Of a stretch of 64,000 bases of DNA, positions 1,202-19,300 are shown piece by piece. The notes below the pieces were generated by a model, which worked only from the letters and a program-made list of their open reading frames with translations, did no database searches and was not told the DNA's origin. The stretch is taken from positions 155,356-219,355 of the IMG/VR virus record IMGVR_UViG_3300008110_010000; one strand, 5' to 3'. A program made the position numbers and the translations under genes. Within the stretch, counting starts at the first letter, position 1. Each line of letters begins with the position of its first letter.

Positions 1202-1215
1202 TATAATGGAATGAT

Positions 1216-1803: not shown

Positions 1804-3326
1804 TAGATCCTAAAAAAACAATTCTCCAGCTTGAAAAGGAAACAATAGTATTAGACGAACTTTCTGTTGTTGATGAGATGAATGCTGGGGACAGTTCAAG
1901 TGTAAATGCATCACAAAGTAGGGAAGAAATTGATATAGGATACGGATTACCCCTGATTAAAATAAACTCTTATGTTGTAAAGAATTTAAAATTTTTCAGA
2001 CTGGATTTATCAAATAAAATTCCAGATCTAATATTCAGATTTACAACAGAGGATGAAACATTTCTTTATACTTCATTTCCTAAGGATGGAGATATTGTTT
2101 GTCTTTATATAAGATCAACATCTGAACTCTATAAACCGATAAGAATGGATTTATTAGTTACTGAAGTAATAAACTCTTTTCCCATGCTAGAGGACGAAAT
2201 AGGCGGTGAAGATAATAGAGCTAATGCTACTAGCACAACTTTTACTATAAAGGCTCAGATGAGAATTCCTGGAATTTATCAGCACCAATCCAAATCTTAC
2301 AAAGATCTGACATCTTTTGAGGTTCTAAGATCTGTTGCCAAAGATCTAGGTTTAGGATTTGCATCTAACGAGAGTGGAACCGATGATAAGATGAGTTGGA
2401 TCTGTCCTAACAAAACCTTTTATAAATTCATAGATGATGTTGCTAATAGCTCATGGAAGGGTGAAGAAGATTTTTTTGATTGGTGGATAGATCAATATTA
2501 TGTTTTAAATTTTATCAATCTAAGAAAACAACTTCTAGAAAAAAGTAAAGACGAAACAAAGATATTAACTGCAATTGGACCGGAGAGGGGAATAGCGGGA
2601 GGATTAACTAGTGATGTAAAACCCTCTGAAATCGATTTACCGCTTTTCTTTACCAATGATTTCTATTATAAAAAATATCCATTTTTTATTAACGCTTATT
2701 CTGTTAAGAATGAATCTGGTTATATTGTGAGTAGATTCGGATATTCCAGGGATCTTCAATTTTACGACACAAAATTAGTTAGTGATAGACCAATTAATAA
2801 GTATGTTAGCTATAAAGTTGAATATGTAACCGAGAAAGATTTAGGTCCTAGTAGCATATTGTTTAAAGGGAGGGTAAACGAAGAGGTTTATAAAAAGGAG
2901 AACAAGAAAACATGGATAGGAACTCAATATGGAGAAAATCAGCATAAAAATATTCAACAGGCTCAGATACAAAACAAGATAAACAAATATGAGAATTTTA
3001 AAGTTTATCTGGAAACCCAAATGCATTCTTATGTTCCGTGGGTCTATAGAGGACAGAATGTACCAACTAAGATCGTACATGCTAGTGCTAGACAAGCAGC
3101 AGTAAATTCTCAGGAGTATAAAGGAGGTGGACAGAAAGATCCAGACCAGTTCCGAGCAGGTGCAAAGGTTGACAATAAATTTCTAAGTGGTGTTTATATG
3201 GTCATGGGATCGTATATTGAGTATATAGAGGGTAGGATCAAGCAGTCGTTTATCCTAGGAAAGAGAGAATGGGTATTAAACGACGGAAGAGGATCAGACC
3301 CAGAACCTAAAGTATCTAAAACGTAA
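1800..3326 (+). CDS. Baseplate hub protein (gp27 / late-control-D-like)
   Basis: 508 aa between the gp53-like and gp5-like genes. Contains TSFEVLRSVAKDLGLGF and a C-terminal LSGVYMVMG...QSFILGKRE pattern typical of hub proteins. Confidence 0.6.
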   Translation: MIDPKKTILQLEKETIVLDELSVVDEMNAGDSSSVNASQSREEIDIGYGLPLIKINSYVVKNLKFFRLDLSNKIPDLIFRFTTEDETFLYTSFPKDGDIVCLYIRSTSELYKPIRMDLLVTEVINSFPMLEDEIGGEDNRANATSTTFTIKAQMRIPGIYQHQSKSYKDLTSFEVLRSVAKDLGLGFASNESGTDDKMSWICPNKTFYKFIDDVANSSWKGEEDFFDWWIDQYYVLNFINLRKQLLEKSKDETKILTAIGPERGIAGGLTSDVKPSEIDLPLFFTNDFYYKKYPFFINAYSVKNESGYIVSRFGYSRDLQFYDTKLVSDRPINKYVSYKVEYVTEKDLGPSSILFKGRVNEEVYKKENKKTWIGTQYGENQHKNIQQAQIQNKINKYENFKVYLETQMHSYVPWVYRGQNVPTKIVHASARQAAVNSQEYKGGGQKDPDQFRAGAKVDNKFLSGVYMVMGSYIEYIEGRIKQSFILGKREWVLNDGRGSDPEPKVSKT

Positions 3327-5455
3327 TGGCCTTTTTAAGCGATATAAAAGATAATGCTACATCGATAGGTAATTCTTCGGATATCCTAAATAGAGGCGTA
3401 GACAAAATGAGAACCCAGTTTTTAAGTGGGTTAAAAACAACTACGTCAGGGCAAAAGGAGGATCCAACTTATACTGGATTTAGACTTATGTTTGATATGG
3501 GATATGGAGGATTAGTTGATCCAGAAACATTTTTACCCGTGAGTCCTTTATTGTCTAAAGGAAGTCTCCAGGTTAGCCCCGGAGGACCTAGAGGTATGAA
3601 GCTAGATTCCCCTGTAGATTTTTTCCATCTTTCTAGAAATAAAATGATGCCTTTTCCAAACTACACTGAAAGACTTCATTATATGACCGCGGAAGCTTTT
3701 TTAAGAGAAAGAAGAAGTGCAGCAGAAAATGGTTTAAATGGTCCTTTTACTGACAACACTGGAAAAGAGATTCCTTTTGATTCATCCCAACTTTCATCAG
3801 GAACAGTTTCCCACAGAGCTGACTCGTTATCAGGATTTAGAAATATTCTAACCTCGATCAATGAAAAAAGTCCTTGGTTTATTCAATCAATAGACGGATT
3901 GGATCAAATTCTTAAAGTTCCCCTAGCTAGACAAATAGGGGGTGGTACAGGAAGGGATCAAAGATCTGGTGTTTTAACTTTTGATTGTTTGGATTCAATA
4001 GATCTTAGAGTTAATGCTATGGCTGAACTCTATAGAAAAGCGACATATGATTTTCAGTATCACAGGGAAATGCTACCTGCGAATCTTAGAAAATTTAGAA
4101 TGTGGATAATAGTAACAGAGATTAGACAAATGGATTTGCAGAGAAATCTTGCAGATGTTCTAAATCCTTTTAATCTATCTGGTGTTAGAAGCGCAGCTCA
4201 AACTATATCTCAAATTGCTCAATCTGCAGGAATTTTAAAAAATAGTGCGACAGAATCAGAAAATCCTAGGAGAGATTTAGAATCTTTGGTTAAATCCTTT
4301 GAAAGATTACAACCCTATGTTTTAATTTATCAATTAGATTTATGCGAATTTAATTTTGACGAAACCTATGCTTTTAGTAGGCTCACAAACAGTAGAAATG
4401 AATCTGCTGTGAATGCTAAATTTAAAATTCATGTTGGAGCTGCTAAGGAGTATAAATTACAGTATAATATTTTATCAGATTTAATTAAAAACCAGTCAAG
4501 TCTTTCTCCTATTTTAATTCAGGATAGCTGGAATTTATTAGGATCTAAAATTCTAATGGAAGGAGTAACATTGGACAATAATCCAAACCTTTTTTCTAGA
4601 CTTGCTAATAACTTCATAAACAATTCTATTGCTTCGGTTATTCAACAAAAAGTAAGTCCTTTGGTGACCGGAGCTCAGTTAGGAAATGCCTACGGATTTA
4701 GATTAAGTGATGCAGTTAGATCCTTAAATTCACTTCCTGATATGATAAACGGGATCAAGACCATAAAAAGTCCTTTTCAAGATTATCGTCCGCAATCTAA
4801 AGGTTTAGGTGGTCCGGAGGAACGACAGTATCCAACTATAAAAGAGGATCTTTATCCTAACACAAGGGTCGCTCCTGGACAGGTTATAGATAACGTGTTT
4901 GGAGAAACCCCAGGGAGAGGTGAGATTCTAAGGGGTGATGTGTATCCGGATAATCCGGGAAAAGATCTCGGTTTGCCTACTAGGATGTATCCTACGATAA
5001 AGGATGACGAATACAGAAACACCGGTGGAGATTTAAGTAATCAAGATTTAGGGGTTCCTGATAGGGTTTATCAAAAAGTAAACGATGACATATACAAAGA
5101 ATCTCCAGGTTTAGATCTTGGATTACCCAAAAGAGTTTATCAAAAAGTAGATGACGACGTCTATACCGGGGTACCAGGGAATGATTTAGGAGTACCTGAA
5201 AGAGTTTATAGAACTAATGATGGAGAGAAAGATGTTTATAACGATGTTCCCGGAAGAGACTTAGGTTTACCCCAAAGAACTTATGCTAGAAACAATGATG
5301 ATGTCTATCCGAATGTATCTGGTTCTGATTTAGGTGCACCTGAGAGGGTTTATCCGAATCTAGACGGTGTTGACACATACAATAATGTTCCTGGATCAGA
5401 TTTAGGACTTCCAAAAAGAAACTATCCAAGTATAGACGAAAACGTTTACAAATAG
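3326..5455 (+). CDS. Tail-tube-initiator-like baseplate protein (gp48/gp54-like N-terminal part) with C-terminal 23-27 aa repeats
   Basis: Tube-like segment LTFDCLDSIDLRV...LPANLRKFRMWIIVTE, baseplate context, and DLGxPxRxY repeats at the C-terminus. Confidence 0.5.
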   Translation: MAFLSDIKDNATSIGNSSDILNRGVDKMRTQFLSGLKTTTSGQKEDPTYTGFRLMFDMGYGGLVDPETFLPVSPLLSKGSLQVSPGGPRGMKLDSPVDFFHLSRNKMMPFPNYTERLHYMTAEAFLRERRSAAENGLNGPFTDNTGKEIPFDSSQLSSGTVSHRADSLSGFRNILTSINEKSPWFIQSIDGLDQILKVPLARQIGGGTGRDQRSGVLTFDCLDSIDLRVNAMAELYRKATYDFQYHREMLPANLRKFRMWIIVTEIRQMDLQRNLADVLNPFNLSGVRSAAQTISQIAQSAGILKNSATESENPRRDLESLVKSFERLQPYVLIYQLDLCEFNFDETYAFSRLTNSRNESAVNAKFKIHVGAAKEYKLQYNILSDLIKNQSSLSPILIQDSWNLLGSKILMEGVTLDNNPNLFSRLANNFINNSIASVIQQKVSPLVTGAQLGNAYGFRLSDAVRSLNSLPDMINGIKTIKSPFQDYRPQSKGLGGPEERQYPTIKEDLYPNTRVAPGQVIDNVFGETPGRGEILRGDVYPDNPGKDLGLPTRMYPTIKDDEYRNTGGDLSNQDLGVPDRVYQKVNDDIYKESPGLDLGLPKRVYQKVDDDVYTGVPGNDLGVPERVYRTNDGEKDVYNDVPGRDLGLPQRTYARNNDDVYPNVSGSDLGAPERVYPNLDGVDTYNNVPGSDLGLPKRNYPSIDENVYK
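4946..5452 (+). repeat. Seven in-frame peptide repeats, consensus PGxDLG(L/V)PxRxYxxxxDDVY, plus one degenerate copy near 4799
   Basis: Read directly from the translation; the DNA copies are diverged. Confidence 0.9.
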
Positions 5456-5471
5456 GGTTTTTATATACTCA

Positions 5472-5479
5472 GATAAATA
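5472..5479 (+). promoter_or_regulatory. Putative late promoter GATAAATA
   Basis: One mismatch from T4 late TATAAATA, 15 nt before the gp5-like ATG. Confidence 0.55.
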
Positions 5480-5494
5480 GAAAAAACCCTTTTT

Positions 5495-6280
5495 ATGTCT
5501 GTACAGAATATTCAAGAATCAAATATTGAAAGAGCCCAGCATTTCTTGGGTGTTGTTGTGGATAACAAAGATCCGGAATTTAGGGCAAGATGTAAAGTTA
5601 AGGTTTTTGGAGTATTTGACGATGTTGCAGATACGGATCTACCATGGGCGTTCCAAAGATTTGATATTTCATTTGGTGACAATGGTGGATCTGGAAGGGT
5701 TAGTATACCTAAATTAGGTGCAGTTGTCCATGTCCAATTCAATAACGGGAACTACTATGCCCCCGAATACAAAGCAGTACAAGAATTATCTTCCGATTTA
5801 ATAGAAGAAATAAAAGCATCTTATGAAGGTGCTCATTCTCTAATCTATGACGGAATAGAACAGCTAAAAATATATTACACTGTTGCTAAAGGACTCGTAA
5901 TAGATTTAAAAGAGTCAACTGTGGTAATTTCTAATGATAATTCAATAACAATAACACATGCTGGCCAAACATCTACCCTTGAATTTAGAGGTGGTAAAAT
6001 TACAGAGTATGCAAATTCTGAAATAGAAAGCACTGCAGTAACTAGAATTAAACAAAGCAGCAACGAAGTTTGGGCAGACGGTAAAACAACAAAGCTTGGT
6101 CATTCCCCTGTTTATTCTGCAGTTTTAGCGGAACCTTTATGGATGTTTTTAAAACAACTCGCAGCAGCGGTAGATGCTAAAGTTCCTTCCTGTCCTGGGT
6201 GTATGGCTACCCTTGCAGAAAGCTACGAACAGCTCTCTACGTCCGATGTGGTTAAGTTAACTAAGAGTAATGAGCAATAA
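5495..6280 (+). CDS. Baseplate central spike, gp5/VgrG-type OB-fold protein without a lysozyme domain
   Basis: LGVVVDNKDPEFRARCKVKVFG...LPWA...IPKLGAVVHVQF is the gp5 N-terminal OB-fold signature, followed by a short beta-rich region. Confidence 0.85.
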   Translation: MSVQNIQESNIERAQHFLGVVVDNKDPEFRARCKVKVFGVFDDVADTDLPWAFQRFDISFGDNGGSGRVSIPKLGAVVHVQFNNGNYYAPEYKAVQELSSDLIEEIKASYEGAHSLIYDGIEQLKIYYTVAKGLVIDLKESTVVISNDNSITITHAGQTSTLEFRGGKITEYANSEIESTAVTRIKQSSNEVWADGKTTKLGHSPVYSAVLAEPLWMFLKQLAAAVDAKVPSCPGCMATLAESYEQLSTSDVVKLTKSNEQ

Positions 6281-9200
6281 TTTAGAAAACCTTGATAAGT
6301 GGGTAAAAGATCTCGAAAACGGTACTATAACTGTTGAAGAGTTAGCTGCAAGATTGTCTTCCATTCCTGATCCTCTCGGGAAGGAGGAAGATATAATTAA
6401 CGCTGGGGAAGAAATTAATAATTCATTAAATCCTGAAGATTTAATACTTACTGATAATGAGATAAATGATATTATATGTAAATACGAGGGCGAGGAATTA
6501 GGAAATAGATTAATCTGGAAAATTTTAGAAAAACTTAATTTAACTTCAGATCTTAAAGAAATTCCGGATTTTTCTAATAATGACTCATTTGAGAAATATT
6601 TTGAAAGAATTTCTTTGCAAGATAGATTACAAAGAGCCAAGGAAATGCTTTTTGATAATCTTGATTTAGATCTTATAGGCATCAAAGTTAAAAGCCCTAA
6701 TTTAAAAAAAAGAAATTTTAAAATTCTAGGCTTTAATTTTCCTCTCAATATCATAACATATAAGGGTAAGCCCTTGTTTTTTCATATAGCTCCTCCTAAG
6801 GTCAACCTCTCCAAAATACTTCAAAGACTAAGAGACAGAATAAAATCTAAAAAGGTAAAGAGCTGCGAAAAGAAAGGAACTTATATAGATGAGGATGATC
6901 TTTTAAAAAAGTTAGAGAATCTTCTAAACGACGAAAAGGAAGAATATAACAATGTATTTGAAATCGCTGATGAGGTTTTTTGTGAGCCTGATATTCCAAT
7001 TAATCCTGAAACGGGGGAATCGCTTTTCACAAAAAACGACTTAACTCAGTTTTTGAAAGAAATATGTGAGCCCGAAATTCCTTCTCCAGAAACACCTATC
7101 GATCCTGAACCTGATATAGAAGATATTTCAGACACTATTAATTCGTGCTTAAAGCAAACTAAATCCATATTTAATGAAGTTAGGGAAAAGAATGAAGAAA
7201 AAGCTAGACTTCAAAAAGCAGAAAAAGAGCTGGAGGAGGTTTTGTTTTATTATAAAATAATTCATAATTATTATGACGAATTATATTCCCAATTTGAAAA
7301 GAAAAGCAAAGCGGGTAAAAAAGGAGATCCATTAAAATTAGCAATCAATTTAGTACTTGGAACCGGAGCTGACGATTATATAAAGAAATTAAATCAATTT
7401 TCTTCAAGATTTCAGTCTACTAAAAAAATAATACTTCCTGGTAGTAAATACATTGGAATATCATTTGGAATAGATTTTCCACACGGCTTAGGGAAAAAAA
7501 TTCCGTATGAGAGAGTAAAAATGGAGGTTAATAACGATCTGATGAGTCAAGATTATCAAAAGGTCGACACATCTAAACTCCAGGTAGGAATGGAGTACAG
7601 CAAGGGTGGATTATTAGGAGGGCAGGATACCTCATTTTTCAAAGATTTTGAATCTTTTTTAAAAATCAAGGATGAAAATCCTAAGAATAAAACAGACTAC
7701 TATAGTTTCGTTAGCGATATAGAAAACTCTAACAAAAGCAAGGGTCAAATTATTAAATCAATAGAATCTGATCATGGATTTTTATTTTCCAATCTAATAG
7801 AGACATCTGCAAGTCCTTGGATATTTTTTACTGCTCAGGAAAGAGGAGATAATGATGCTAGAAAATCTGCCGATATAAAACCAGCAAAAACCGACAAGGA
7901 AGGAAATCCAAACAAGGAATTTGAAGAATTCTGGCAAGACTTTAAAACAAAATGGGACCAAAAGTATAACGATAGAAAGAAAACAATAGAGGATAAAATA
8001 CTGGATTTAAAAAAATCTTCGGATGCCTTAGCAGAAAAAATAGCGGATTATTATTTTACGATCAGCGTGTCTTCTGTAAAGAAAAATAGTGAACTTCTTA
8101 AAGAAGCTTCAGATGGAATAAAATCAAGGGTTACTGCAATTGAAAATTCTTTAATGTCAATAGCTGAGAAGATAACTAAGTTAGATCAGGAGAATTCTCC
8201 AGAGGGACTTTCCACCAAAGCTAATTCCATAAGTTGTGCCACTAAAAAAGAAGAGAAATGCCCAACAGAATGTTGCGGTCCTGCTGGGCAGAGTTTAAAA
8301 TTAAAAGATACATGTGCTTCACATCGATCTCCGGATTGTCCAAATCTTTTTACCAAATGCTATTGGAAAGAGTTTTGTAAAAATTTAAATAAAGTGGGAT
8401 TACTCCCCCTCCCTGCTGGTCTTCCCCCTATAGAAAATCCCGCAAATTTTTTACCGAATCTGGGTTTAAAATATTGGCCGGTAGGTTATCTTCCGCCATC
8501 TTTTATACCTTTACCTCCACCGATAGTGAATCCATTAGACGGGTTACCTTTTATTAGAATTCCTATGCCAATGGTATGGACGAAGGTAGATCCTGTTGTT
8601 ATTCCGATAGGAATTGGGGTCATAGTTATATTCGTTCCTTTCATCGGGGGATTCATGCCTAGCCCCCTAGTTTTTTTCCATGATTTTTTAACTGGGAATA
8701 GTATGTTTCTTCTTGGACTCAGAGGGTTTAGGTTCATTCCTAGAAAATCTGATCCTGTTGCTAACGATCCTCTCGAAAATTACAAAAAGATGCTTTCTAA
8801 AGGAATACCAAACTTTCTTTTTCCTTTTTCCAACCTTGGAAAAGATGACGTTGATGATCCTAAAAGACTTTTCGGAGAAGTTGTTTCGAATCTTGAAAAG
8901 AGACTTGCAAATTATAGCAAGCCTGTAAACATGGAGAAAATCCAAAAATTACAAGACAAGATAACAAAAAAGAAAGAGGAGTCTCAATCTAAGATACTAG
9001 AAAAGAAAAGAAAAATGGCTTTAGAGGGTGGAGATATTAAAAAAGAGAAGGAGGAAATAGACAACTTTCTAAAATCTATAGACGGTGAAAAAATATCAGC
9101 CTTAAAAGATATTATGAAAGAATATTTGACGGGAGCGGTAGACATTCCAGATATTCAGTTCCCTAAAAAATCAAAAAATCTTTTAGTTGATCTGCCCCAG

Positions 9201-10574
9201 CCTATAAAATCTTTAAGGGATTTAGATGCTAAAAGAAAACTTGGTGTTATCCCGGATAAAATTCCCAAGATAAATCTTTTATCTAGGATCCTTAGAGGAG
9301 TAGATTCTATAAAAATTCCTACCCCAAAAGAATTAGACGATTTAAACAAAAATCTTCCTAATAATTCTAAGATAGTTGCTAAATTTAATAATAAACTGAA
9401 GGATCTTTCTAGTTCTCCCGAGGACGTAAAAAAATTAGAAGATTTAGTTAAGAAAAGTGCAACTGAGGTTTTTGAAGGTGAGGATTCTCCTTTAAGTAGT
9501 AAAAAACTTCTTTCGTTTAAAGCTAAAATAACACCCGCCCCTAGAATTTTAGGTGCAGGTGTACCTTTGCCTTCTGGAATAGAAGAAATACCAAATCCTG
9601 TTATTTCTCAATTAAAAAACTTTGCCACAAGTAGTATAAAATTAAATACAGATCAACTAACATCTATAGTAAGTAATTTAGCAATTTCTGAGAATAAGAT
9701 TATAAGACAGCGGGATCTTAAAATGATCACAAAGAACGTAATTAATAGTTCGCTATCAAAATTTCCTGTTGATTTAAAAAACTTTTCCATTCCTGATACT
9801 GCAAGCATGAAAAACATGCAGAAATCATTTACTAATTTGTCTTCTTCGTTAAACCTCCCTTCCATTCCTCCTAAGAAAAGCGCTTCACCTGTTTCTCCGA
9901 TTGGCCCTGGAGGTATTCCCCCTATAATCATTCCAGGAAAAGTGATTAGTAAATTCTTGGTTGATGGAGCAATGTCTTCTGTAAATCCTGAAATGATCAC
10001 TAAATTATTGCCAGGGGTTCTTGAAAACTTCGAAACGTTATCAGATAGTGACATTAAAACAATGTCAGATAATATTGTTAAGAATTTTACTAAAACAGCT
10101 AAGATACCTGCTTTGGATTCTATTCCAAAGATACCCATCCCTGCAAGGAATCAGGATTATATAGAATTCACTATGAATTTCTTACCAACTCATCCAGCCT
10201 CTGATATAGCATTTACCCAACTTTGGGATAAATTTAAAACCCCTCCAAGAATTCCTATCCCTGGTGAATTTCTTCAAAAGTATCTGGATATACAGGATGC
10301 AATATTCTCTAAGGTCCCTTGGCCTGTGGTAGTTGTACTGGGTAGAAATATTATTAATATCTTAAATCCTTTATGGAACAACGAAGATATCCCACGCTGG
10401 GACAGAATGAGTTTAAAGAATCCTTTTTATGTTGTTTTCATGGACGAGTTCTTAAGATCTGCTGTTGATATCTCAGGAGGCTTTAAATTCTTTGCCGGTG
10501 CGGGAAAATTATTTTATCCTCTGCCAGATTCTGAAATCTATCTAGGGTTTGGGACTAAAATATCAATAAATTAA
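6270..10574 (+). CDS. Large unknown protein (1434 aa), likely virion-associated
   Basis: Long ORF overlapping the gp5-like stop. Lys/Glu-rich helical regions flank a Cys cluster and a Pro-rich hydrophobic core. Confidence 0.6.
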   Translation: MSNNLENLDKWVKDLENGTITVEELAARLSSIPDPLGKEEDIINAGEEINNSLNPEDLILTDNEINDIICKYEGEELGNRLIWKILEKLNLTSDLKEIPDFSNNDSFEKYFERISLQDRLQRAKEMLFDNLDLDLIGIKVKSPNLKKRNFKILGFNFPLNIITYKGKPLFFHIAPPKVNLSKILQRLRDRIKSKKVKSCEKKGTYIDEDDLLKKLENLLNDEKEEYNNVFEIADEVFCEPDIPINPETGESLFTKNDLTQFLKEICEPEIPSPETPIDPEPDIEDISDTINSCLKQTKSIFNEVREKNEEKARLQKAEKELEEVLFYYKIIHNYYDELYSQFEKKSKAGKKGDPLKLAINLVLGTGADDYIKKLNQFSSRFQSTKKIILPGSKYIGISFGIDFPHGLGKKIPYERVKMEVNNDLMSQDYQKVDTSKLQVGMEYSKGGLLGGQDTSFFKDFESFLKIKDENPKNKTDYYSFVSDIENSNKSKGQIIKSIESDHGFLFSNLIETSASPWIFFTAQERGDNDARKSADIKPAKTDKEGNPNKEFEEFWQDFKTKWDQKYNDRKKTIEDKILDLKKSSDALAEKIADYYFTISVSSVKKNSELLKEASDGIKSRVTAIENSLMSIAEKITKLDQENSPEGLSTKANSISCATKKEEKCPTECCGPAGQSLKLKDTCASHRSPDCPNLFTKCYWKEFCKNLNKVGLLPLPAGLPPIENPANFLPNLGLKYWPVGYLPPSFIPLPPPIVNPLDGLPFIRIPMPMVWTKVDPVVIPIGIGVIVIFVPFIGGFMPSPLVFFHDFLTGNSMFLLGLRGFRFIPRKSDPVANDPLENYKKMLSKGIPNFLFPFSNLGKDDVDDPKRLFGEVVSNLEKRLANYSKPVNMEKIQKLQDKITKKKEESQSKILEKKRKMALEGGDIKKEKEEIDNFLKSIDGEKISALKDIMKEYLTGAVDIPDIQFPKKSKNLLVDLPQPIKSLRDLDAKRKLGVIPDKIPKINLLSRILRGVDSIKIPTPKELDDLNKNLPNNSKIVAKFNNKLKDLSSSPEDVKKLEDLVKKSATEVFEGEDSPLSSKKLLSFKAKITPAPRILGAGVPLPSGIEEIPNPVISQLKNFATSSIKLNTDQLTSIVSNLAISENKIIRQRDLKMITKNVINSSLSKFPVDLKNFSIPDTASMKNMQKSFTNLSSSLNLPSIPPKKSASPVSPIGPGGIPPIIIPGKVISKFLVDGAMSSVNPEMITKLLPGVLENFETLSDSDIKTMSDNIVKNFTKTAKIPALDSIPKIPIPARNQDYIEFTMNFLPTHPASDIAFTQLWDKFKTPPRIPIPGEFLQKYLDIQDAIFSKVPWPVVVVLGRNIINILNPLWNNEDIPRWDRMSLKNPFYVVFMDEFLRSAVDISGGFKFFAGAGKLFYPLPDSEIYLGFGTKISIN

Positions 10575-10596
10575 TTCATCTTTTAAAAAACAACTA

Positions 10597-11721
10597 ATGG
10601 CTAAAAAAAGAACCTATACTAGAGAAGAATACTCTCCAGAGGAAAGAGCAATAATGGATGCTTTGTATGAAGGTCATTTCAATTCAAATTTCACACAAAA
10701 ATCAATTCCATTCACATCAAAAGAACTTGAAGAAAATCAAGTTTTAAGAGTAAAGATAACAAGAATCAGAGACAACAGTGCAATTGGTGAATCCGTAAAT
10801 GGACAATCAGTTTCTATCGATATTCTTAAGGAAGAAAAAGCAATTAGGAGATTAGGTTATCCCCCTATGGATATCATGGAAGGAACCGAAATTGACGTTG
10901 TTGTATTCAAAGACCGCAGCGGCATTTATAATGGATCTCTTGCTGCAGGATATGAAAACTCCCTTAAGAATGAACTTTCTAAATCTATCAAAGATGAGAA
11001 GAGCGCATACACTGTAAGAATCGAATCAACTTGTCCTGGAGGATTTATGGTTAATCTCTCAGGAATTAAGTGTTTCTTACCTGGATCACTTGCAGCTGCA
11101 AATAGAATTATTGACTTCCAATCTTTTGTAGGGAAAACCATCAATGTGATGATTGAGACTTATGATGAAAGAAGAGATATTTTTGTAGTATCTTTCAAAA
11201 AATATCTAAAACACATCATAGATCAAAAAGTAGAGGAACTTTCGATAACACAGCAATACAGTGGAACCGTTACTGGAACATCACCTGCAGGAGTTTTTGT
11301 TGAATGGGACGAATATTACACAGGGTTAATTCCGGCGGAAGAATTTGAATCTGCGGGTTTAAAAATGCATATGGAACCAGGAAGCTCAGTTTCCTTCTAT
11401 GTTTCAGATTTTAGAAATCCAAACAGAATAGTTTTAAAATTAAACCCACCAGAGGGGAAAGAAAGGGAACTTCAGGAATTAAGGGACATATCTTTATCGG
11501 AAGACAAAGAAAATAAAATATATAGAGGAACCGTCTCTAAGATCAAGAATTTTGGAGTTTTTGTAAAACTCGAAAATGGGATCCCGGGACTGGTGGAAAA
11601 GGACAATTTAGCTAAGCCACCTAAAGAGTACGAAGTCGGTTCCGAAATTCTCTGTACTGTTTTAGATGTTGAGCTACAAAGTTCTAAATTATATCTAAAA
11701 CAGAAAATTGAGAATACTTGA
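10597..11721 (+). CDS. Ribosomal protein S1-like protein (about four S1/OB repeats)
   Basis: GGFMVNLSGIKCFLPGSLA, GTVTGTSPAGVFVEW and GTVSKIKNFGVFVKLENGIPGLV are S1-domain motifs. The N-terminus YSPEERAIMDALYE resembles Bacteroidota S1. Confidence 0.85.
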   Translation: MAKKRTYTREEYSPEERAIMDALYEGHFNSNFTQKSIPFTSKELEENQVLRVKITRIRDNSAIGESVNGQSVSIDILKEEKAIRRLGYPPMDIMEGTEIDVVVFKDRSGIYNGSLAAGYENSLKNELSKSIKDEKSAYTVRIESTCPGGFMVNLSGIKCFLPGSLAAANRIIDFQSFVGKTINVMIETYDERRDIFVVSFKKYLKHIIDQKVEELSITQQYSGTVTGTSPAGVFVEWDEYYTGLIPAEEFESAGLKMHMEPGSSVSFYVSDFRNPNRIVLKLNPPEGKERELQELRDISLSEDKENKIYRGTVSKIKNFGVFVKLENGIPGLVEKDNLAKPPKEYEVGSEILCTVLDVELQSSKLYLKQKIENT

Positions 11722-13168
11722 TCAAAATTTCTTCTACGCAGCAAAAATTGGATTTGAATTTGAGTTCATGTCCAATTTTTCGCGTTCGGAGATGGTGCAA
11801 AGAATAGGCGACGAGATTGGGAAGGAAATTAAGCTTTTCAAGAGATACCACTCCAGATTTAAGCCAACAAGGGACGTTTTTAAATTAGAACCAGATTTTT
11901 CTGGCGGTACCAAGATGGTAGAGCTAATTACTGGTCCGATGGATTACTTCGAGGCAATCCCCGTTTTAATTAGAATTCTAAAATGGATAGAAGAAAACGG
12001 ATACACGAATGAAAAATGCGCACTGCAATTTGGATTAAGCTTCGATCGTCTTAAATACCCAGATCTAATAGACCTTAAAAATTTAAATGCTTTAAAATTT
12101 GTTTTAGGGTATGATGAAGAGTATGTGTGGAGCAGATTTCCTGAAAGAAGAGGATCTCTCTATGCTAAATCTATAAAAAGAATAATTCCGGCTAACAAGT
12201 TCATTAGAAAATATGACGGAACTATTGCTGATAGAAATTCTTATGTTGTATACACTGAAAAAAACATGGGAATCAACCTTACTAAATTAGAAGAGGGTTA
12301 TATCGAGGTGAGATACATGGGAGGGACTGATTACCAGAAAAAATACACTGAGATAAAAGAAATTATAGATCACACCATAACTCATACTTTTAAAACCCTT
12401 TTACAGAACGACACCTTAAATCAAAAAGAAACATCGGATCTAAGCGCTCTAATTTCCAAATTATATAAAGAAACTGAGAGCTTTATTGACCCTGAAACGT
12501 TTGTTAGAAACTATCCAGATCTTCATGTAACTGTTGATTTAAGAGAAGATTTACAGATTATTAAAACATATTTTCACGACATTAGAGACATTCTTTACAA
12601 TTTAATAGTAGAGAATGAAATTACCTCTGGATTCCTAAATTATGACACACAAATTTCAAGATATCAGCTAAAAGACGGAAAAACTACAAGAGCTAATATT
12701 ATAAAAAATTTAGATCTTGTTGAGTGTGAAATTGAAGGAAACGTAGCTAAGTGTAGAGCTTTTGGATGTAAATTCAAAAATTGTCAAATAGAGGACACTG
12801 ATTTGGTAATGAATAATGAAATTGAAGATTCTAAAATTCTAGATTGTGATCTGGGTCTGGGAAACACTGTTAATAACTCTTATATAGATGCCAAAGATAA
12901 AGAAATAAGTTGTGAAATTACTGGGGGTATAATTAGATCAGGGTACATCACATCTCTTGCTCAGGTTTCTTCCACTACAGAAATTATAACAAATGATGCG
13001 GATGGAAAAAGCAAAGGCAAAGGCAAGGGGGAAAAATTCTTAAAGAATGTAGTATTTCCTGATCGTAATATTGAAGGACAAGTTGGCCCAAGCGACGATT
13101 TCAATAACCTTAATAATACAATTCCTTCTATTTCGATAAATAGATTGTATAAAAATAATGATCAATAA
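11708..13168 (+). CDS. Amidoligase-like (COOH-NH2 ligase type 2) protein with a C-terminal beta-helix-like region
   Basis: IGFEFEF, FKLEPDFSGG, VELITGP and IEVRYMGG motifs; TTG start; C-terminal Cys/Ile/Asn short-period repeats. Confidence 0.65.
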   Translation: MRILDQNFFYAAKIGFEFEFMSNFSRSEMVQRIGDEIGKEIKLFKRYHSRFKPTRDVFKLEPDFSGGTKMVELITGPMDYFEAIPVLIRILKWIEENGYTNEKCALQFGLSFDRLKYPDLIDLKNLNALKFVLGYDEEYVWSRFPERRGSLYAKSIKRIIPANKFIRKYDGTIADRNSYVVYTEKNMGINLTKLEEGYIEVRYMGGTDYQKKYTEIKEIIDHTITHTFKTLLQNDTLNQKETSDLSALISKLYKETESFIDPETFVRNYPDLHVTVDLREDLQIIKTYFHDIRDILYNLIVENEITSGFLNYDTQISRYQLKDGKTTRANIIKNLDLVECEIEGNVAKCRAFGCKFKNCQIEDTDLVMNNEIEDSKILDCDLGLGNTVNNSYIDAKDKEISCEITGGIIRSGYITSLAQVSSTTEIITNDADGKSKGKGKGEKFLKNVVFPDRNIEGQVGPSDDFNNLNNTIPSISINRLYKNNDQ

Positions 13169-13941
13169 TGGCTAATACTACGGAAGACCAATTAGTTCAA
13201 GAAATAAAGGATGATATCTCACATTCTTGCGCTTTACCATACGCTCTGAATGACGGGGAAATTAAAAGAATCATCAAAAGGGCCAAAGCATATTTTTATG
13301 ACAACTATCAATATGCTGTAGAGGATAGAATTTTTATTTTAGGTAAAGAACTTTTTTCACATCAATCATTTAGAGCAACTAGACAGGTTCAGCTACCTGA
13401 ATGCGTGATAAGTGTTTATGATGTAAGGGAGGTTGGTGGATCTGGTATAGTTGGAACACCCGATAAAGATTTTGGAGATTCCAAGCTATTAGGATCTGAA
13501 CTTATGTTAAGTCCCTTCGTGGGAGACAACCTTGTGTATAGAACCGTTTTATACTCATTTTTTGACCTCGCAAAAGCATACCTATTAGAAACATATGCTT
13601 TCAATTATAACAAGAATACGAAGAAGCTAACCATCCTAGGACGCGATCCTAGCCGAACATCCAGCACAGGTTTAGCCCTTGGAGGTAAGGATGTGGGAAT
13701 TAAGGCATGTATTGCCATTCCCGAGGAAAATCTATATTCTGATGAGCTTTTCGTTAGATATTGCCTTGCAGAAGCAAAAATTAATATCGGGAGACTTTTA
13801 GGAACTTTTGGTTACCAATTACCTGGTGGGGTTACCATAAACGCTAGTGCTATTTCAGCACAGGGAACCACAGAAAAGACTGAGGTAATGGATATGATTA
13901 AATCGGAAAACACCCCAAGCTATTTCTTACAGTGGAATTAA
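13168..13941 (+). CDS. Neck protein, T4 gp13-like
   Basis: C-terminal LGTFGYQLPGGVTINASAISAQG...E matches the gp13 LPGGVTxNG motif. Confidence 0.8.
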   Translation: MANTTEDQLVQEIKDDISHSCALPYALNDGEIKRIIKRAKAYFYDNYQYAVEDRIFILGKELFSHQSFRATRQVQLPECVISVYDVREVGGSGIVGTPDKDFGDSKLLGSELMLSPFVGDNLVYRTVLYSFFDLAKAYLLETYAFNYNKNTKKLTILGRDPSRTSSTGLALGGKDVGIKACIAIPEENLYSDELFVRYCLAEAKINIGRLLGTFGYQLPGGVTINASAISAQGTTEKTEVMDMIKSENTPSYFLQWN

Positions 13942-13968
13942 TCCTTAAATTATCTTCTGCTTATATTT

Positions 13969-13980
13969 TATAAATATATA
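13969..13980 (+). promoter_or_regulatory. Late promoter, exact TATAAATA overlapping AATATATA
   Basis: T4 late consensus at 13969-13976, 13 nt before the gp25-like ATG. Confidence 0.65.
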
Positions 13981-13989
13981 AGGGAGATA

Positions 13990-14361
13990 ATGATAAAGAT
14001 CACTGACATATACCCTAGAAATCCTGACGATCCCTTATACGTCCCGGACAAATTAGAAACCGACGATGTTGTGGAATCCTCTATAGGAATGATAAAGCAG
14101 ATCATGTTAACTAAACCTGGTTCTGTTTTAGGAGACCCATTCTTTGGTATAGATCTAGAATCTTTAATTTTCGATTTTGAGGTCAATCAGCAAGAATTAG
14201 AAGAGGCAATCAGCTTACAGCTTTATACCTACTGTCCTTTTGCTAGAGGAATACTCAAAATTGATTTTCAGGTGGGTTTTTTCAGAGGAGAAACCAGAGA
14301 TAGCTGTGTTATTGAATTCGCTATCAAAGGTAATCCTGTATTGGGAATAAAGGTAATTTAA
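13990..14361 (+). CDS. Baseplate wedge subunit gp25-like (GPW/gp25 family)
   Basis: IKQIMLTKPGSVLGDPFFGIDLESLIFD motif and 123 aa length. Confidence 0.85.
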   Translation: MIKITDIYPRNPDDPLYVPDKLETDDVVESSIGMIKQIMLTKPGSVLGDPFFGIDLESLIFDFEVNQQELEEAISLQLYTYCPFARGILKIDFQVGFFRGETRDSCVIEFAIKGNPVLGIKVI

Positions 14362-14362
14362 A

Positions 14363-16087
14363 ATGGATTTATTCAAAAAAAATCGGGCTAAAATTCAGGA
14401 TCTTCTTCAGGATACTCTTGAGATCATCCAGAAAAGATATAATCAAGCCAATCAATTATTTACAGTAGCTTCTGCTTGGGGACAAATATTATTTGTTCTG
14501 CAGAACCTTTCTCAGCTAATCCTTTACTTTATTGAGGATTCTATTACTGAGCTTGATATTAGAAAAGCAAGTAGGGAAAGTTCAATTTATGGACTTGCTG
14601 CTCTTGCTGGACATAACGCTTCCAGAAGTACTGCTGCAAGGGGCCAGGTGGAAATTATATGGAACGGAACAGATGCAACAACTGTAGGCGGTGGAGCAAT
14701 TCTAATTCCTAGATATGCTCAAATTAAATTTTCTAACGGTGGCGTTTCTTATGTTTTAAACTTTCCCCAGGAATATACTAGGATTAATCTAAATTCTTCT
14801 TCCAAGGTTTCTTGTGAAATATTAGAGGGAAGCATTAAAACTTCGACATTCACAGGAAACGGAAGATCACTACAAAGTTACAACGTGTCTGACAGGATTA
14901 CTTCCGCCATTGACAACTTTCAAGTTAAAGTTTTTGTAGACAGTGACGAATGGAAGGTTTATGATTCTTTATATGATATTCCATTTAATGCAGAGGGTGT
15001 TTTGGTTAGAACCGGTATCAGTAGTGGTATAGACGTAATTTTTGGAAATTTAAATTTTGGAAAAATCCCTCCTACTGGATCCACAATACAGGTACAATAT
15101 CTGGAAACCCTAGGGTCTGGAGGAAATATCAGTTCTCTTGAACCTGGAAAAATAGCATTTGAATTTAGCGACGACGGAACGGATTCTTTCGGTAATTCAG
15201 TTTCCCTTCAGGAGTATTTAAAAATAAACTGCACCGTTGCACCTCAGTTAGGAACCGATAAAGAATCCATAGAACTTACAAGAATTCTTGCTCCTAAAAC
15301 CTCAAGATCTTTTGTTTTAGCAAATCCCGATAATTATATTACATACTTTGAAAAATTTGGTATATTCTCAATTATTGAGGCTTTTTCAACCTTTGATGAT
15401 CAATATCTGGATGATGATAATATTATTTATGTTCTTTTAGTACCTGATATAACTCAGAAATTAAAAACTAATGAAACGTATTTTGATATTGCAGAGACAG
15501 AATTCAAGCTGACAGAATTCCAAAAAAATAGACTTCTTCAAGCAATCGAAGATAGCGGACAGAAAATTGTTACTACTGAAGTAAGAATATTAGATCCTAA
15601 AATTTCTAGGTATGTTTTAAATATACTCATAACTGTTTTTGAAGGTTATGATCCTGATACTATAAAAGGACAAATCATTGATTCTATTAGCAATTACTTT
15701 ATAGGTATTAGAAGAAGAGACAAAATCCCTAGATCTGATTTAATTTCAATTGTAGAATCTGTTCCGGGGGTAGATTCAGTTACTTTATTTTTTATATCTG
15801 AAAAAAATGAACTGTATGCTAAAAGTGTAGAATCTCTTCCTGATACAGATCCTAAAAAGAAAACGGTTTTAGGTTTAGATGATTTTGGAGATATTCTTTT
15901 TGATAAGGATGAAATAGTAATACTTACTGGCGGATGGTCAGACAGAGCTGGTTTATTTTATGATAAAGGAGCGGATTTAAACAAGTTATCTTCAATCAAT
16001 ATAGATATTAGAAAAACAGTTCCTGTTACCTACAACACAGAGGTAAATATGAAGAACAAGCAATTCATAAGAAATAGTAATTCATAA
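14363..16087 (+). CDS. Baseplate wedge protein gp6 / baseplate-J-like
   Basis: Follows gp25. Contains A...G.NASRSTAA, IFGNLNFGKIPPTGSTIQVQYLET.G..GN and a RSFVLANPDNY segment typical of gp6. Confidence 0.8.
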   Translation: MDLFKKNRAKIQDLLQDTLEIIQKRYNQANQLFTVASAWGQILFVLQNLSQLILYFIEDSITELDIRKASRESSIYGLAALAGHNASRSTAARGQVEIIWNGTDATTVGGGAILIPRYAQIKFSNGGVSYVLNFPQEYTRINLNSSSKVSCEILEGSIKTSTFTGNGRSLQSYNVSDRITSAIDNFQVKVFVDSDEWKVYDSLYDIPFNAEGVLVRTGISSGIDVIFGNLNFGKIPPTGSTIQVQYLETLGSGGNISSLEPGKIAFEFSDDGTDSFGNSVSLQEYLKINCTVAPQLGTDKESIELTRILAPKTSRSFVLANPDNYITYFEKFGIFSIIEAFSTFDDQYLDDDNIIYVLLVPDITQKLKTNETYFDIAETEFKLTEFQKNRLLQAIEDSGQKIVTTEVRILDPKISRYVLNILITVFEGYDPDTIKGQIIDSISNYFIGIRRRDKIPRSDLISIVESVPGVDSVTLFFISEKNELYAKSVESLPDTDPKKKTVLGLDDFGDILFDKDEIVILTGGWSDRAGLFYDKGADLNKLSSINIDIRKTVPVTYNTEVNMKNKQFIRNSNS

Positions 16088-16088
16088 A

Positions 16089-16343
16089 ATGTTTAATACT
16101 GAAAGAAAAAGTTATTATGACTACATAAATTCAACAAGAGATAATAGATCAAATGTTGGATTCAACTACGAGGGGCAGATATTTGAAAAAACCCTGTCCT
16201 CTATAACACTTGAAGGCGACAAAAACAGGAAAAGTATAATGTCGTATATCGAGAGGGTAGTTTATAGATTAATCGAGGCAACTAAGGGAATTAGAAATTT
16301 TGTTAACTACAGAGTTCCTAAAAATAATAAGTACGTTAGGTAA
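16089..16343 (+). CDS. Hypothetical protein (84 aa)
   Basis: Fills the operon gap; its stop overlaps the next start (TAATG). Confidence 0.6.
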   Translation: MFNTERKSYYDYINSTRDNRSNVGFNYEGQIFEKTLSSITLEGDKNRKSIMSYIERVVYRLIEATKGIRNFVNYRVPKNNKYVR

Positions 16344-19300
16344 TGAATTATAAAAATCTTCTATTTTTTAATAAAACTGGGCACCAATCAAATTTTGTTT
16401 GGAACGGAGAATTCTGGGAAACTAGATTAATGCTTCCTCAGGTATCTGTGGATCTTTTTGAAATAGAACACCTGTTTATAATTGAAAAATTTGAAGATCT
16501 AAACGGAAACACTGTTTATGGATATCCTCATATAACCCCAGAAATAAGTTCAACCTCTGCATCTGGAATATATGGATCTTTTAATTCTGGATCTAGAAAG
16601 GTTACATTAAACTCTGAACCTGTTGTGGATTTTATAGGATCTAAGGTTTTTTGTCAGCAGTTCCCTAACGGAAATCTTGTAACTGGTGTTAGTGTGGTGG
16701 ATAAGACAATTGAGCTTGAAAATGCTGCAACGTTTTCAGAAAATTCCGTCCCTTTGTTTTTTAATTTATGGAGAGTTAGTTTCGAGACAACTAGAAACGT
16801 TTTAGATTTTGATGCTTTTGATCCTATTAGAGCGAGTATAACTAAGGGATTAGATTATATCACGACTTCCTCTGATGTAAGTGCTATTTCGGAGAATGAC
16901 GAATTTTTAATGATTTTAGGAGACGGAATTCCTAAAGATGCTAGAATTACAAAAGTTTCTGGAAATAAAATATACTTAAACAAGAAGTGCGAAGTTACTC
17001 TTAATAACATCACGGTTTTTGTATATCCTGTCGAGGAAAGAAATAACATTTCTTCTTACATATATCAATACATCCTCACCGAAGATGGAACTCTGGATGC
17101 TCCTGTTTTAGAATCAATCAATACTAATTATTTAAAAATCGATTATGATCCAAATGAAACTGTAAATGATTACTTAAGAAGCTCGGGTGAAATATATTCG
17201 GGAAGTGCCTCTGTTAACATAGCTCTTAATTCTAAAGAGGAGGGAATATTCGGTAGAACATTAGTAATAGAGGATCTTTCATTAGGGTACCCAAAAACTG
17301 TAGCAAGGATAGAGATACACGGGGAAACAATAGGTGAAGATGAAAGATATAAAACAATTTTAAATAATTTTGGGAGAAGGTTAAATGCGGAAGACGCTTA
17401 TATATTAAGAGATTCTGATCCCAAAGAGCCATTCACAGATTATGAGATTTTAAATGATAAGAGAAAAGAGCTTTTATTAGAAGGACATGAAATATACTCT
17501 TATTTAGGATCTTATAAGGGTCTTGTTAATGCTATTAAATTTTTTGGGTACCAAGATCTAAGAATTAAAGAATATTGGTTAAATATTAAAAAATCTGAAT
17601 CTGAAACATCCGCTCTCAAACAAAATACGGATTTTTTAGAGAGGTGGAATGCTTTACCCGGAGGTCAACAAAATTTAATATCCAGTATAATTGACGATGA
17701 AAATTCTGGTAAGTATAAACAGGTAGAAATTTACGGAAAAAGAAACGACGGAACTTTTGGTTTAAAATCCTCGATGGAAAAATTATTTCCATCCTCAAGT
17801 TTTAAGAAAACTGCACTCTTTGGTTTATTCTATGATATCAACAGGGTAGTTGAGAACCAAGAGGACATTTATGAATATCCCGTTGTGGAAAATGCTTTTG
17901 TTTTTTCTCCGGAGGAGGTACTTATAAAACTGTTTGGCTTAAAAGAAAAATTAAAAAAAGATTATCTTCCTTTAAATGCGAGGATTATTGATATAACAGG
18001 AGAAGGTGTCTATTTTGGAATCTACAAAACCAGAGCATGGACAGATAATTTAAAGATAGATGAGTTAAATCAGGGAATTGACCTAGAGCTAGGATTTACC
18101 CCAGAATATGGTTACATAGAGGATTTAAGGCCCTTTTCAGTAAGACCCAATTCTGATATTCCGTATGTTCCTTATGTTGGGGTGGAACCTAACACCTACG
18201 ATTTTTCAACTTATGGAAATCTAGTAGATTTACCCCAGAACAATTTAAAACTCCCAGGTAAACAGTCCAAAGCTTTAGCTGATGCAATAAAGCTATTTTA
18301 TGATGAAAGAAACACGAAGGGAATAAAACCTTACAGACTAGGTGACGGAGATAATAAAAACGGGGGATACCGAAAACTATATGACGGGAAAGTTTATGAT
18401 GTCCCCGCAGGATTTCCGGTTACGATGGAAATAACATCTTTTGTTTTAACATGGGACGAAGTAAATAATCAGTGGGATTCTTTAGATAGAAATATTTCAA
18501 CATATTCTTCAACACTAGCATCTATTTCAGATGTTTCCGGATATAACGATCAGACCCTAATAGACTCTAGCTTAAATTTTGAATTTAATCTTTCTACCAT
18601 ATTTGGAACCTTGTTCAATATTAATCTCCAAACTGGTATATCAATTTTAAACCCAGCATCTGGTAAGGTTCAACTTAAATTTACTTCTAACACAGATTCC
18701 GATTGTCAGTTTCTATGTGAGGTTCAAAGCTATAGTACTCTCACTGGAATAGCTAATGTTAAACTTTTATGGGTTAAAAATGAAGGAATATTCGATGACT
18801 GGAAAGTAGAAATCGTTAACATTTTTAAAGACAATCTCGATTTATCCTATTATGATTATTCTTTCAATCCCGACGGATTTTATTCTTGGGATAATCTTAG
18901 ATTCGCGGGATTTTATGAGGTTGAATGGAAGATCACAAAGAAAGATGATAGACCTTATTATTATGATCTAAGAGGTAAAATAACTGATTATTATAAACTT
19001 CCCCTTGTTCTTCCATATGATGGAATATATTCGGTTCAATGCAGGGTTTGGGATGGATTTAACGACATCTGTTCTACACACTATGAGAATTGCTTGGAAG
19101 TTAAGAAGAGGGAAGTTGAAATTGTTAGTGTTTCTAGATTCAGAGAAGCTGAAGTTTATACCTGGGATCAGACAAAACAGCCTTGGGATAATTTTGAATC
19201 GATGTGGGTTTTTCCCGTTGAAAGAAGACCAGAAGAACCTAAACCATCTAATTTAATCCTAAATCCTGCTGAATATGGAAATCAATTTAACGAGGGTCAA

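What the first reader, a model, noticed from the sequence alone, without database searches (positions are those of the whole stretch)
10597..11721. Phage ribosomal protein S1 homologue embedded in the baseplate-neck operon
Seen: about four S1 repeats rather than six, a Bacteroidota-like N-terminus, and a position among virion genes overlapping the next ORF. Most leaders in this window are A-rich and lack Shine-Dalgarno sites. Known: S1 homologues have been reported in some huge phages, and Bacteroidota initiate translation largely without SD pairing. Inference: a late-expressed S1 that biases ribosomes toward phage A-rich leaders or displaces host S1.
Basis: partly seen in the sequence, partly recalled or inferred. 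Interest (0 to 1): 0.6.

Follow-up and report, generated by a model that had tools for sequence, protein, structure and literature searches.

The report
Huge-phage ribosomal protein S1 homologue
A freshwater huge phage carries a shortened, four-domain copy of bacterial ribosomal protein S1 that keeps the Bacteroidota-type ribosome anchor and always sits among its tail-baseplate genes; such phage S1 copies were already reported in 2020, so this is a well-described new member, not a new kind.

Summary
Window 10597-11721 (+) encodes a 374-aa protein with an N-terminal helix and four S1/OB domains. Its best structural matches are E. coli bS1 on the 30S subunit. Its N-terminal helix matches the helix of Bacteroidota rpsA and not that of gamma-proteobacteria, and its second domain matches bacterial S1 domain 2. 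The gene lies in a gap-free array of baseplate and neck genes and overlaps the next gene by 14 nt. This position is fixed: S1L (the S1-like gene) is upstream of the same neighbour in 69 of 69 related IMG/VR loci, down to 35% identity, and in the 462-kb phage LR756500. Leaders are A-rich and depleted in Shine-Dalgarno motifs. All phage copies, including those of Lak and the 630-735-kb phages, form one long-branched clade, so the acquisition was old. The most likely function is a phage bS1 substitute that docks on host 30S subunits and supports initiation on SD-less mRNAs during late expression. Docking on uS2 got only weak in-silico support, and nothing shows selectivity for phage mRNAs. Al-Shayeb et al. 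2020 already described such "possible rpS1s" and their link with missing SD sites. I rate this a new member of a known kind, of moderate interest.

The parts
10575..10596 (+). 22-nt leader of the S1-like gene; the 30 nt before the ATG contain 15 A and no G, and no SD motif
10597..11721 (+). S1-like gene (S1L), 374 aa, four S1 domains
10624..10689 (+). N-terminal anchor helix (residues 10-31), with family-invariant Y12 and Y24 and the Bacteroidota-type motif EYSxxE...LYE
   Evidence: F. johnsoniae bS1 residues 4-40 bind uS2 and uS8 (PMC13000457)
10738..10938 (+). OB domain 1 (residues 48-114); conserved within the phage family but not recognisable as any bacterial S1 domain by sequence
11008..11193 (+). 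S1 domain 2 (residues 138-199); the most conserved part and an orthologue of bacterial bS1 domain 2 (GGF.V.LSG..CFLPGS signature)
11254..11439 (+). S1 domain 3 (residues 220-281); best match is bacterial domain 4/5 type; keeps F234, D271 and R277, lacks the first aromatic residue and the His
11521..11700 (+). S1 domain 4 (residues 309-368); best match is bacterial domain 5; keeps F319, F322, D357 and K364, with the His replaced by invariant E334
11708..11721 (+). 14-nt overlap between the end of S1L and the TTG start of the next gene (possible translational coupling)
11708..13168 (+). Downstream neighbour, 486 aa: N-terminal amidoligase-like (glutamine-synthetase fold) part plus a C-terminal beta-helix
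5495..6280 (+). Baseplate hub-like gene (context)
6270..10574 (+). 1434-aa upstream neighbour of unknown family (context); ends 22 nt before S1L
13168..13941 (+). T4 gp13-like neck protein (context)
13990..16087 (+). gp25-like (123 aa) and gp6/J-like (574 aa) baseplate wedge genes (context)

Best explanation
S1L is an old, vertically inherited, shortened copy of bacterial ribosomal protein bS1, carried by a lineage of huge phages that most likely infect Bacteroidota. Shown: four S1 domains preceded by a helix; that helix carries the Bacteroidota-type motif; domain 2 is orthologous to bacterial domain 2; domains 3 and 4 keep most canonical RNA-contact residues. Also shown: the gene is a fixed member of the baseplate/neck gene array, and the genome does not use SD sites. 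Inferred: the helix with domains 1-2 docks on uS2 at the 30S platform, in the place of the loosely bound host bS1. Inferred: domains 3-4 hold single-stranded A-rich leaders near the mRNA channel. The gene is made together with the virion proteins. It would therefore keep or raise SD-independent initiation capacity when phage late mRNAs dominate and host bS1 is limiting or no longer made. Selectivity for phage over host mRNAs is possible but unsupported.
For: Collinear rpsA match and S1 Pfam hits. Four-domain model whose best PDB matches are ribosome-bound E. coli bS1: 9gut_B E 5e-24, 9gux_B TM 0.67 over 260 residues, 9guq_B domains 1-2 TM 0.71. The N-terminal helix matches the Bacteroidota rpsA helix at 20.3 bits against a best shuffle of 12.2, and does not match E. 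coli or Acinetobacter; Y12 and Y24 are invariant in 38 family members. Domain 2 scores 35 bits against E. coli domain 2 and 8 against the next best domain. RNA-contact positions are kept 4 of 5 in domain 4 and 3 of 5 in domain 3. Complex prediction of residues 1-135 with F. johnsoniae uS2 gave weak support: median ipSAE 0.34 (runs 0.26, 0.34, 0.52), best of 3 controls 0.01, partner pLDDT at least 64, runs agreeing in at least 34% of contacts. In calibration the mark was reached by 51 of 78 solved pairs and 2 of 108 mismatches, but passes at 0.60 or under are more often wrong than right unless the guess was likely beforehand. The genome is SD-poor with A-rich leaders, and the rest of the record carries 21 tRNAs and a tmRNA. 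[quoted passage not shown] Al-Shayeb 2020 found that phages with possible rpS1s rarely have SD sites.
Against: No experiment and no RNA or protein data exist; no RNA run holds the sequence. Domain 1, which in E. coli helps bind uS2, is not recognisable by sequence. The family sits on an 8.3 substitutions/site stem. It evolves slightly faster than its structural neighbours: median identity 48% against 52-77%. Both points fit a changed function. The window's subfamily has only about 9-11 residues before the anchor helix. So it has no counterpart of the first, aromatic-rich helix that contacts uS8 in F. johnsoniae bS1 (residues 11-20). His is replaced by Glu in domain 4. A translation-takeover factor would be expected early, not in a virion-gene array. 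The uS2 used for docking is from F. johnsoniae, and the true host is unknown.
Confidence: 0.5

Rival explanations
1. S1L is an off-ribosome RNA-binding protein. It could act as an RNA chaperone or protector of phage late mRNAs, as a partner of the phage tmRNA, or as a cofactor of a phage RNase or polymerase, in the way host S1 serves T4 RegB and Q-beta replicase. It would use the S1 domains but not the ribosome site.
For: RNA-contact residues are partly kept. The long branch and unrecognisable domain 1 suggest loss of canonical constraints. The phage encodes a full-length tmRNA but no SmpB in the 219 kb held. Al-Shayeb 2020 explicitly left open a role 'on or off the ribosome'. Extraribosomal S1 roles are well documented (PMC13157829 discussion; PMC12916289).
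Against: The Bacteroidota-type anchor helix with invariant Y12 and Y24, and the near-invariant domain 2, have no obvious use off the ribosome. The uS2 docking test passed its controls, though weakly.
Confidence: 0.2
2. S1L is a virion-associated protein: either a structural or assembly factor built from OB folds, or a cargo protein packed with the tail or head and delivered into the cell at infection.
For: It holds a fixed position inside the baseplate/neck array: 69 of 69 loci, plus LR756500 and the Saprospirales-MAG contig. There is no room for its own promoter (22-nt leader, overlap downstream), and promoter-like or terminator-like sites are not enriched. Its rate of change is similar to that of its structural neighbours. 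Late synthesis is hard to reconcile with an early takeover role unless the protein is carried in the virion.
Against: There is no match to any PHROG structural family. All top fold matches are bS1 or RNA-binding S1 proteins. Retention of the ribosome-anchor motif is not explained by a purely structural role. In Lak, LR745206 and LR756501 the homologue lies 100-230 kb from the baseplate genes. The same array also holds an enzyme-like gene, so position alone does not imply a structural role.
Confidence: 0.15
3. S1L is a decoy that occupies the bS1 site on host ribosomes but, lacking two domains, cannot support host mRNA recruitment. It would shut off host translation, while unstructured phage mRNAs initiate without S1 help.
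For: The same anchor evidence as the main explanation. Only four of six domains are present, and there is no counterpart of the uS8-contacting helix.
Against: Host shut-off would be expected early rather than with the virion genes. Domains 3-4 keep RNA-contact residues under strong conservation, which a passive plug would not need. Per Duval et al. 2013 (recalled from memory; cited in the reference list seen, not read here), the first three E. coli S1 domains suffice for S1's activities on the 30S subunit.
Confidence: 0.1

Closest known systems
Bacterial ribosomal protein bS1 (rpsA), especially the Bacteroidia form (F. johnsoniae bS1; PMC13000457)
   Same: Tandem S1 domains in rpsA order; an N-terminal helix with the Bacteroidota motif; the domain 2 signature; an acidic domain 1 and a basic domain 2; fold matches to ribosome-bound bS1.
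   Different: Four domains and 374 aa instead of six and about 590 aa. 92.7 bits against the 577-bit equivalog cut-off. Domain 1 is unrecognisable by sequence. No counterpart of the aromatic first helix that contacts uS8. His replaced by Glu in domain 4. Encoded in a phage virion-gene array.
'Possible rpS1' proteins of huge phages (Al-Shayeb et al. 2020, PMC7162821), e.g. in LR756500, LR745206, LR756501/3, LR756502/4 and Lak phages
   Same: Homologous at 28-35% identity, with similar lengths of 363-389 aa. One clade with SH-aLRT 100. SD-poor genomes. A member of this family is annotated '30S ribosomal protein S1' in that paper's supplementary GenBank files. LR756500 has the same gene order.
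   Different: This subfamily has a short N-terminus and a 10-13-residue insert between the helix and domain 1. In Lak and the 630-735-kb phages the gene is not near the baseplate genes.
Four-domain S1 of low-GC Gram-positive bacteria (NCBIfam PRK06676, 391 aa)
   Same: Similar length and domain number; second-best NCBIfam match, E 7.6e-26, model 12-346 of 391.
   Different: Far below its cut-off (91 against 368 bits). The phage protein has the Bacteroidota-type anchor helix and a domain-2 signature. From general knowledge, Gram-positive S1 binds ribosomes weakly.
bS1 of Microcystis jumbo phage PhiMa05 (PMC13157829)
   Same: A phage-encoded bS1 proposed to replace the host protein.
   Different: PhiMa05 bS1 groups with Vampirovibrio proteins, which suggests a host-derived gene, and sits with other ribosomal protein genes. 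The present family is long-branched, stands alone as a ribosomal protein gene, and lies among tail genes.

Membership tests
bS1 / rpsA | Several tandem S1 (OB) domains collinear with rpsA | tested here: met
   TIGR00717 alignment 68-368 to 30-341 of 516; four OB domains in the model; top Foldseek hits are bS1
bS1 / rpsA | Score above the curated equivalog cut-off | tested here: not met
   92.7 bits against 577 (TIGR00717); all other rpsA models are also far below their cut-offs
bS1 / rpsA | Six S1 domains, as in Bacteroidota and Proteobacteria | tested here: not met
   Four domains; domains 3 and 4 resemble bacterial domains 4/5 most
bS1 / rpsA | N-terminal helix that anchors the protein on uS2 | tested here: met
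   Met at sequence level only: the Bacteroidota helix HMM scores 20.3 bits against a best shuffle of 12.2; helix 14-31 in the model
bS1 / rpsA | Domain 2 signature (GGF.V.L.G..AFLPGS) | tested here: met
   Phage domain 2 HMM hits E. coli 113-169 at 35.1 bits and Bacteroidota domain 2 at 28.3 bits; other domains score 8 or less
bS1 / rpsA | Physical binding to uS2 / the 30S subunit | tested here: inconclusive
   Complex prediction gave weak support: median 0.34, best control 0.01; in silico only, with F. johnsoniae uS2
bS1 / rpsA | RNA-contact residues in the C-terminal domains (Phe, Phe, His, Asp, Arg of the S1 motif) | tested here: inconclusive
   Domain 4 has F319, F322, D357 and K364 but E334 for His. 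Domain 3 has F234, D271 and R277 but A231 and P246
bS1 / rpsA | Component of the ribosome in vivo, needed for initiation | not testable with these tools
   No RNA runs, no proteomics, no cultured phage
Huge-phage rpS1-like proteins (Al-Shayeb 2020) | Multi-S1-domain protein encoded by a phage of more than 200 kb that lacks SD sites, homologous to those reported | tested here: met
   The record is 219 kb at an estimated 79% completeness. Homologues in the LR7565xx and Lak genomes. One clade. SD depletion. A family member appears in that paper's supplement
Phage baseplate/tail structural OB-fold proteins (e.g. gp5/gp27-type hub) | Similarity to a known virion protein family | tested here: not met
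   No PHROG structural hit, only a weak nuclease S1-domain hit; no virion protein among the top 50 fold matches

The most novel reading that the evidence does not exclude
S1L is made late because it is loaded into the particle, with the tail or head contents, and is delivered with the DNA. The phage would then bring its own Bacteroidota-fitted bS1 substitute to host ribosomes from the first minute of infection. That would explain why a translation factor is locked into the baseplate/neck gene array across this phage lineage.
Probability: 0.1. Interest if true: 0.8.

Novelty: new member of a known kind. Interest (0 to 1): 0.35.

Why it matters
Bacteroidota start translation without SD pairing and seem to lean on bS1 and upstream adenines, but how bS1 does this is still open (PMC13000457). 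This phage family offers a natural minimal version: anchor helix, domains 1-2 and two RNA-binding domains, present in hundreds of freshwater phage contigs. A minimal version could show which parts of bS1 are needed for SD-less initiation. The fixed place of the gene inside the tail-gene array is, as far as I could find, not described. It raises the testable question of whether a ribosomal protein mimic is only co-expressed with virion proteins or travels in the particle. If it is an ordinary late-expressed bS1 substitute, it confirms an idea proposed in 2020 and adds no new principle.

Tried and rejected
- PDB sequence searches with the N-terminal 135-138 residues, as a single sequence and as a 28-sequence profile, found no S1 chain. 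Domain 1 cannot be assigned by sequence.
- The PHROGs scan of S1L gave only a weak S1-domain hit in a nuclease family.
- The tree of helix, domain 1 and domain 2 could not place the phage clade inside or outside Bacteroidota: it gave a polytomy, with only two proteobacterial outgroups and long branches. I make no claim about the donor.
- The sigma-70 promoter and terminator scan of 5000-17000 showed no enrichment (37 against 43 expected; 11 against 7.5) and nothing flanking S1L. Bacteroidota-type and phage promoters are not covered by that scan.
- No bS21 and no SmpB in the 219-kb record. The record is incomplete, so absence is not shown.
- No RNA sequencing run holds the region, so read laying was not used and expression could not be checked.
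- Complex prediction gave weak support only. It is cited as such and not as evidence of binding.
- The big representative protein search was not used, because the word search and family scans had already settled what the protein is.
- Linkage of S1L to the amidoligase-like gene as a functional pair was considered. In LR745206 that gene stays near the hub gene without S1L, and Lak has S1L without it. The pairing is therefore not obligatory.

Full report
**What the window is.** The window is bases 155356-219355 of a 219,355-bp linear IMG/VR virus record, estimated 79% complete. GC content is 35%. Near-identical DNA occurs in freshwater and lake metagenomes from at least 13 studies, and no RNA run holds it. 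Its baseplate wedge protein is closest to those of LR756500 (462 kb), the Lak phages and the 630-735-kb phages of Al-Shayeb et al. 2020. After those come phages of Flavobacterium, Tenacibaculum and Chryseobacterium. A Bacteroidota host is therefore likely but not shown.

**The observation.** ORF 10597-11721 (+) encodes 374 aa.
- It matches Pfam S1 (E 5.7e-20). It aligns collinearly with NCBIfam rpsA models, far below their cut-offs: TIGR00717 gives 92.7 bits against 577.
- I folded an alignment of 38 family members. Its first row, P0001, differs from the window protein only at residue 316, S for I.
- The model has pLDDT 80.4 and pTM 0.52. It shows a helix at 14-31 and four OB domains at 48-114, 138-199, 220-281 and 309-368, joined by helical linkers.
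- Foldseek against the PDB puts E. coli bS1 on the 30S subunit first. 9gut_B has E 5e-24, 9gux_B has TM 0.67 over 260 residues, and the domain 1-2 chains have TM about 0.7.

**Which S1 domains they are.** I built HMMs of each phage domain and searched E. coli, Acinetobacter and 31 Bacteroidota rpsA products.
- Phage domain 2 is the orthologue of bacterial domain 2: 35.1 bits at E. coli 113-169 against 8 for the next domain.
- Domain 1 matches nothing by sequence.
- Domains 3 and 4 match bacterial domains 4 and 5 best.
- At the canonical RNA-contact positions, domain 4 keeps F319, F322, D357 and K364 and has invariant E334 in place of His. Domain 3 keeps F234, D271 and R277.

**The N-terminus.** I fetched rpsA from 31 genomes of the phylum of a Saprospirales MAG. 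Their segment before domain 1 carries a helix motif of the type EY[ST]xxE...[LM]Y[ES]xT[LM].
- An HMM of that 32-residue segment aligns to residues 10-29 of the phage protein in the same register, at 20.3 bits.
- The median over 101 targets is 13.1, and the best of 2020 shuffles is 12.2. E. coli scores 1.5 and Acinetobacter -0.9.
- Y12 and Y24 are invariant in the family.
- The window's subfamily has only about nine residues before the helix, so it has no counterpart of the first, uS8-contacting helix. Longer relatives carry an aromatic-rich N-terminal extension.
- A complex prediction of residues 1-135 with F. johnsoniae uS2 gave weak support: median 0.34, best control 0.01.

**Context.** From position 20 to 16087 the genes lie on one strand with gaps of at most 48 nt. 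The order is: hub-like, a 1434-aa protein, S1L, a 486-aa protein, gp13-like, gp25-like, gp6/J-like.
- S1L starts 22 nt after the upstream stop. The next gene's TTG start overlaps it by 14 nt, and orthologue alignment confirms that start.
- The same order holds in a 453-kb contig (62% S1L identity), a 103-kb contig (49%), a contig binned in a Saprospirales MAG (38%) and, with insertions, LR756500 (29%).
- Of 69 IMG/VR loci with enough sequence upstream of the 486-aa gene, all 69 have S1L there on the same strand, and 68 have it adjacent.
- Median identity to the window is 48% for S1L. It is 52% for the neighbour, 58.5% for gp6-like, 62% for gp25-like and 77% for gp13-like.
- In Lak-A1, LR745206 and LR756501 the structural genes are scattered, and S1L lies 100-230 kb from them.

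**Translation signals.** In 209 genes of the record, A reaches 50-60% at -16 to -3 and G is about 10%. GGAG occurs in 3.3% of leaders against 7.0% of intragenic controls. In the window, 3 of 37 genes have an SD-core tetramer. The record also holds 21 tRNAs and a full-length tmRNA (Rfam 79.5 bits), but no bS21 or SmpB.

**Evolution.** In a tree of helix, domain 1 and domain 2, all 19 phage sequences form one clade (SH-aLRT 100). The clade includes Lak, the LR genomes and the MAG contig, and it sits on a stem of 8.3 substitutions per site. It joins an unresolved polytomy with Bacteroidota when rooted on two proteobacteria. The gene is therefore an old feature of this phage lineage, and the donor is unresolved.

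**Interpretation.** The retained anchor motif and the near-invariant domain 2 argue that ribosome docking is still selected. The two C-terminal domains can plausibly bind RNA. Co-transcription with virion genes is inferred from spacing only.
- I put 0.5 on a late-expressed bS1 substitute that sustains SD-independent initiation.
- I put 0.2 on an off-ribosome RNA-binding role.
- I put 0.15 on a virion-associated role.
- I put 0.1 on an inhibitory decoy.

**Novelty.** Al-Shayeb et al. [quoted passage not shown] They noted that phages with possible rpS1s rarely have SD sites, and proposed a role in initiation on or off the ribosome. A member of this very family is annotated as S1 in their supplementary files. 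Literature searches found no study of this family's function. What is added here:
- the four-domain anatomy;
- the Bacteroidota-type anchor;
- the single origin across the Lak and related huge-phage lineage;
- the fixed position in the baseplate/neck array.

Noticed in passing
window 11708-13168 (+): The gene overlapping the end of S1L encodes a 486-aa protein. Residues 1 to about 300 look like a carboxylate-amine ligase. 3 of 4 orthologues hit Pfam Amidoligase_2 (best E 4e-4), and the AF2 model (pLDDT 80.8) matches glutamine synthetase and GshF folds at E about 1e-5, with low TM scores (0.2-0.3). Residues 308-414 form a beta-helix. An enzyme-like gene inside a baseplate/neck array is unexplained.
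   Followed up: partly
outside the window: G000:C1:41802-66097 (locus L127 for the tmRNA): The same phage record carries a full-length tmRNA (Rfam RF00023, 79.5 bits) and 21 tRNA genes, but no SmpB or bS21 in the 219 kb held. Bacterial S1 is known to bind tmRNA, so a link to S1L is conceivable.
   Followed up: partly
window 6270-10574 (+): The 1434-aa protein just upstream of S1L has no PHROG hit. Its counterparts vary from 424 aa (LR756500) and 944 aa (MAG contig) to 1710 aa (L004). By eye it has a long proline-rich hydrophobic stretch in the middle. Its position after the hub gene suggests a tape-measure or ejection protein, but this was not tested.
   Followed up: no
L010 (contig CALAZP010000190.1, 64.2 kb) in genome G001: A contig with the same hub ... 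S1L-amidoligase-gp13-gp25-gp6 order is binned in an 'uncultured Saprospirales' MAG. That MAG also has its own 589-aa rpsA on another contig. The contig is probably a phage contig binned with its host or by chance, so it is only a weak host hint.
   Followed up: partly
L003:13348-14022: In the 453-kb relative, a GIY-YIG/NUMOD3 homing-endonuclease-like gene and a 180-aa ORF are inserted between the amidoligase-like and gp13-like genes. Both are absent from the window.
   Followed up: no
MK250016.1 (Lak-A1) 342541-343218 and 88226-88957: The Lak homologues of the gp13-like and hub-like proteins contain 7 and 9 in-frame TAG codons. This fits the stop-codon recoding reported for Lak phages (recalled from the literature, not checked here). 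The window itself reads cleanly under table 11.
   Followed up: no
window 9000-14000: Near-identical DNA (97-100% of sampled words) is present in runs from at least 13 studies dated 2017-2024, labelled freshwater or lake water. Several others are labelled 'fungus metagenome'. This suggests a widespread lake phage; the odd label was not examined.
   Followed up: no
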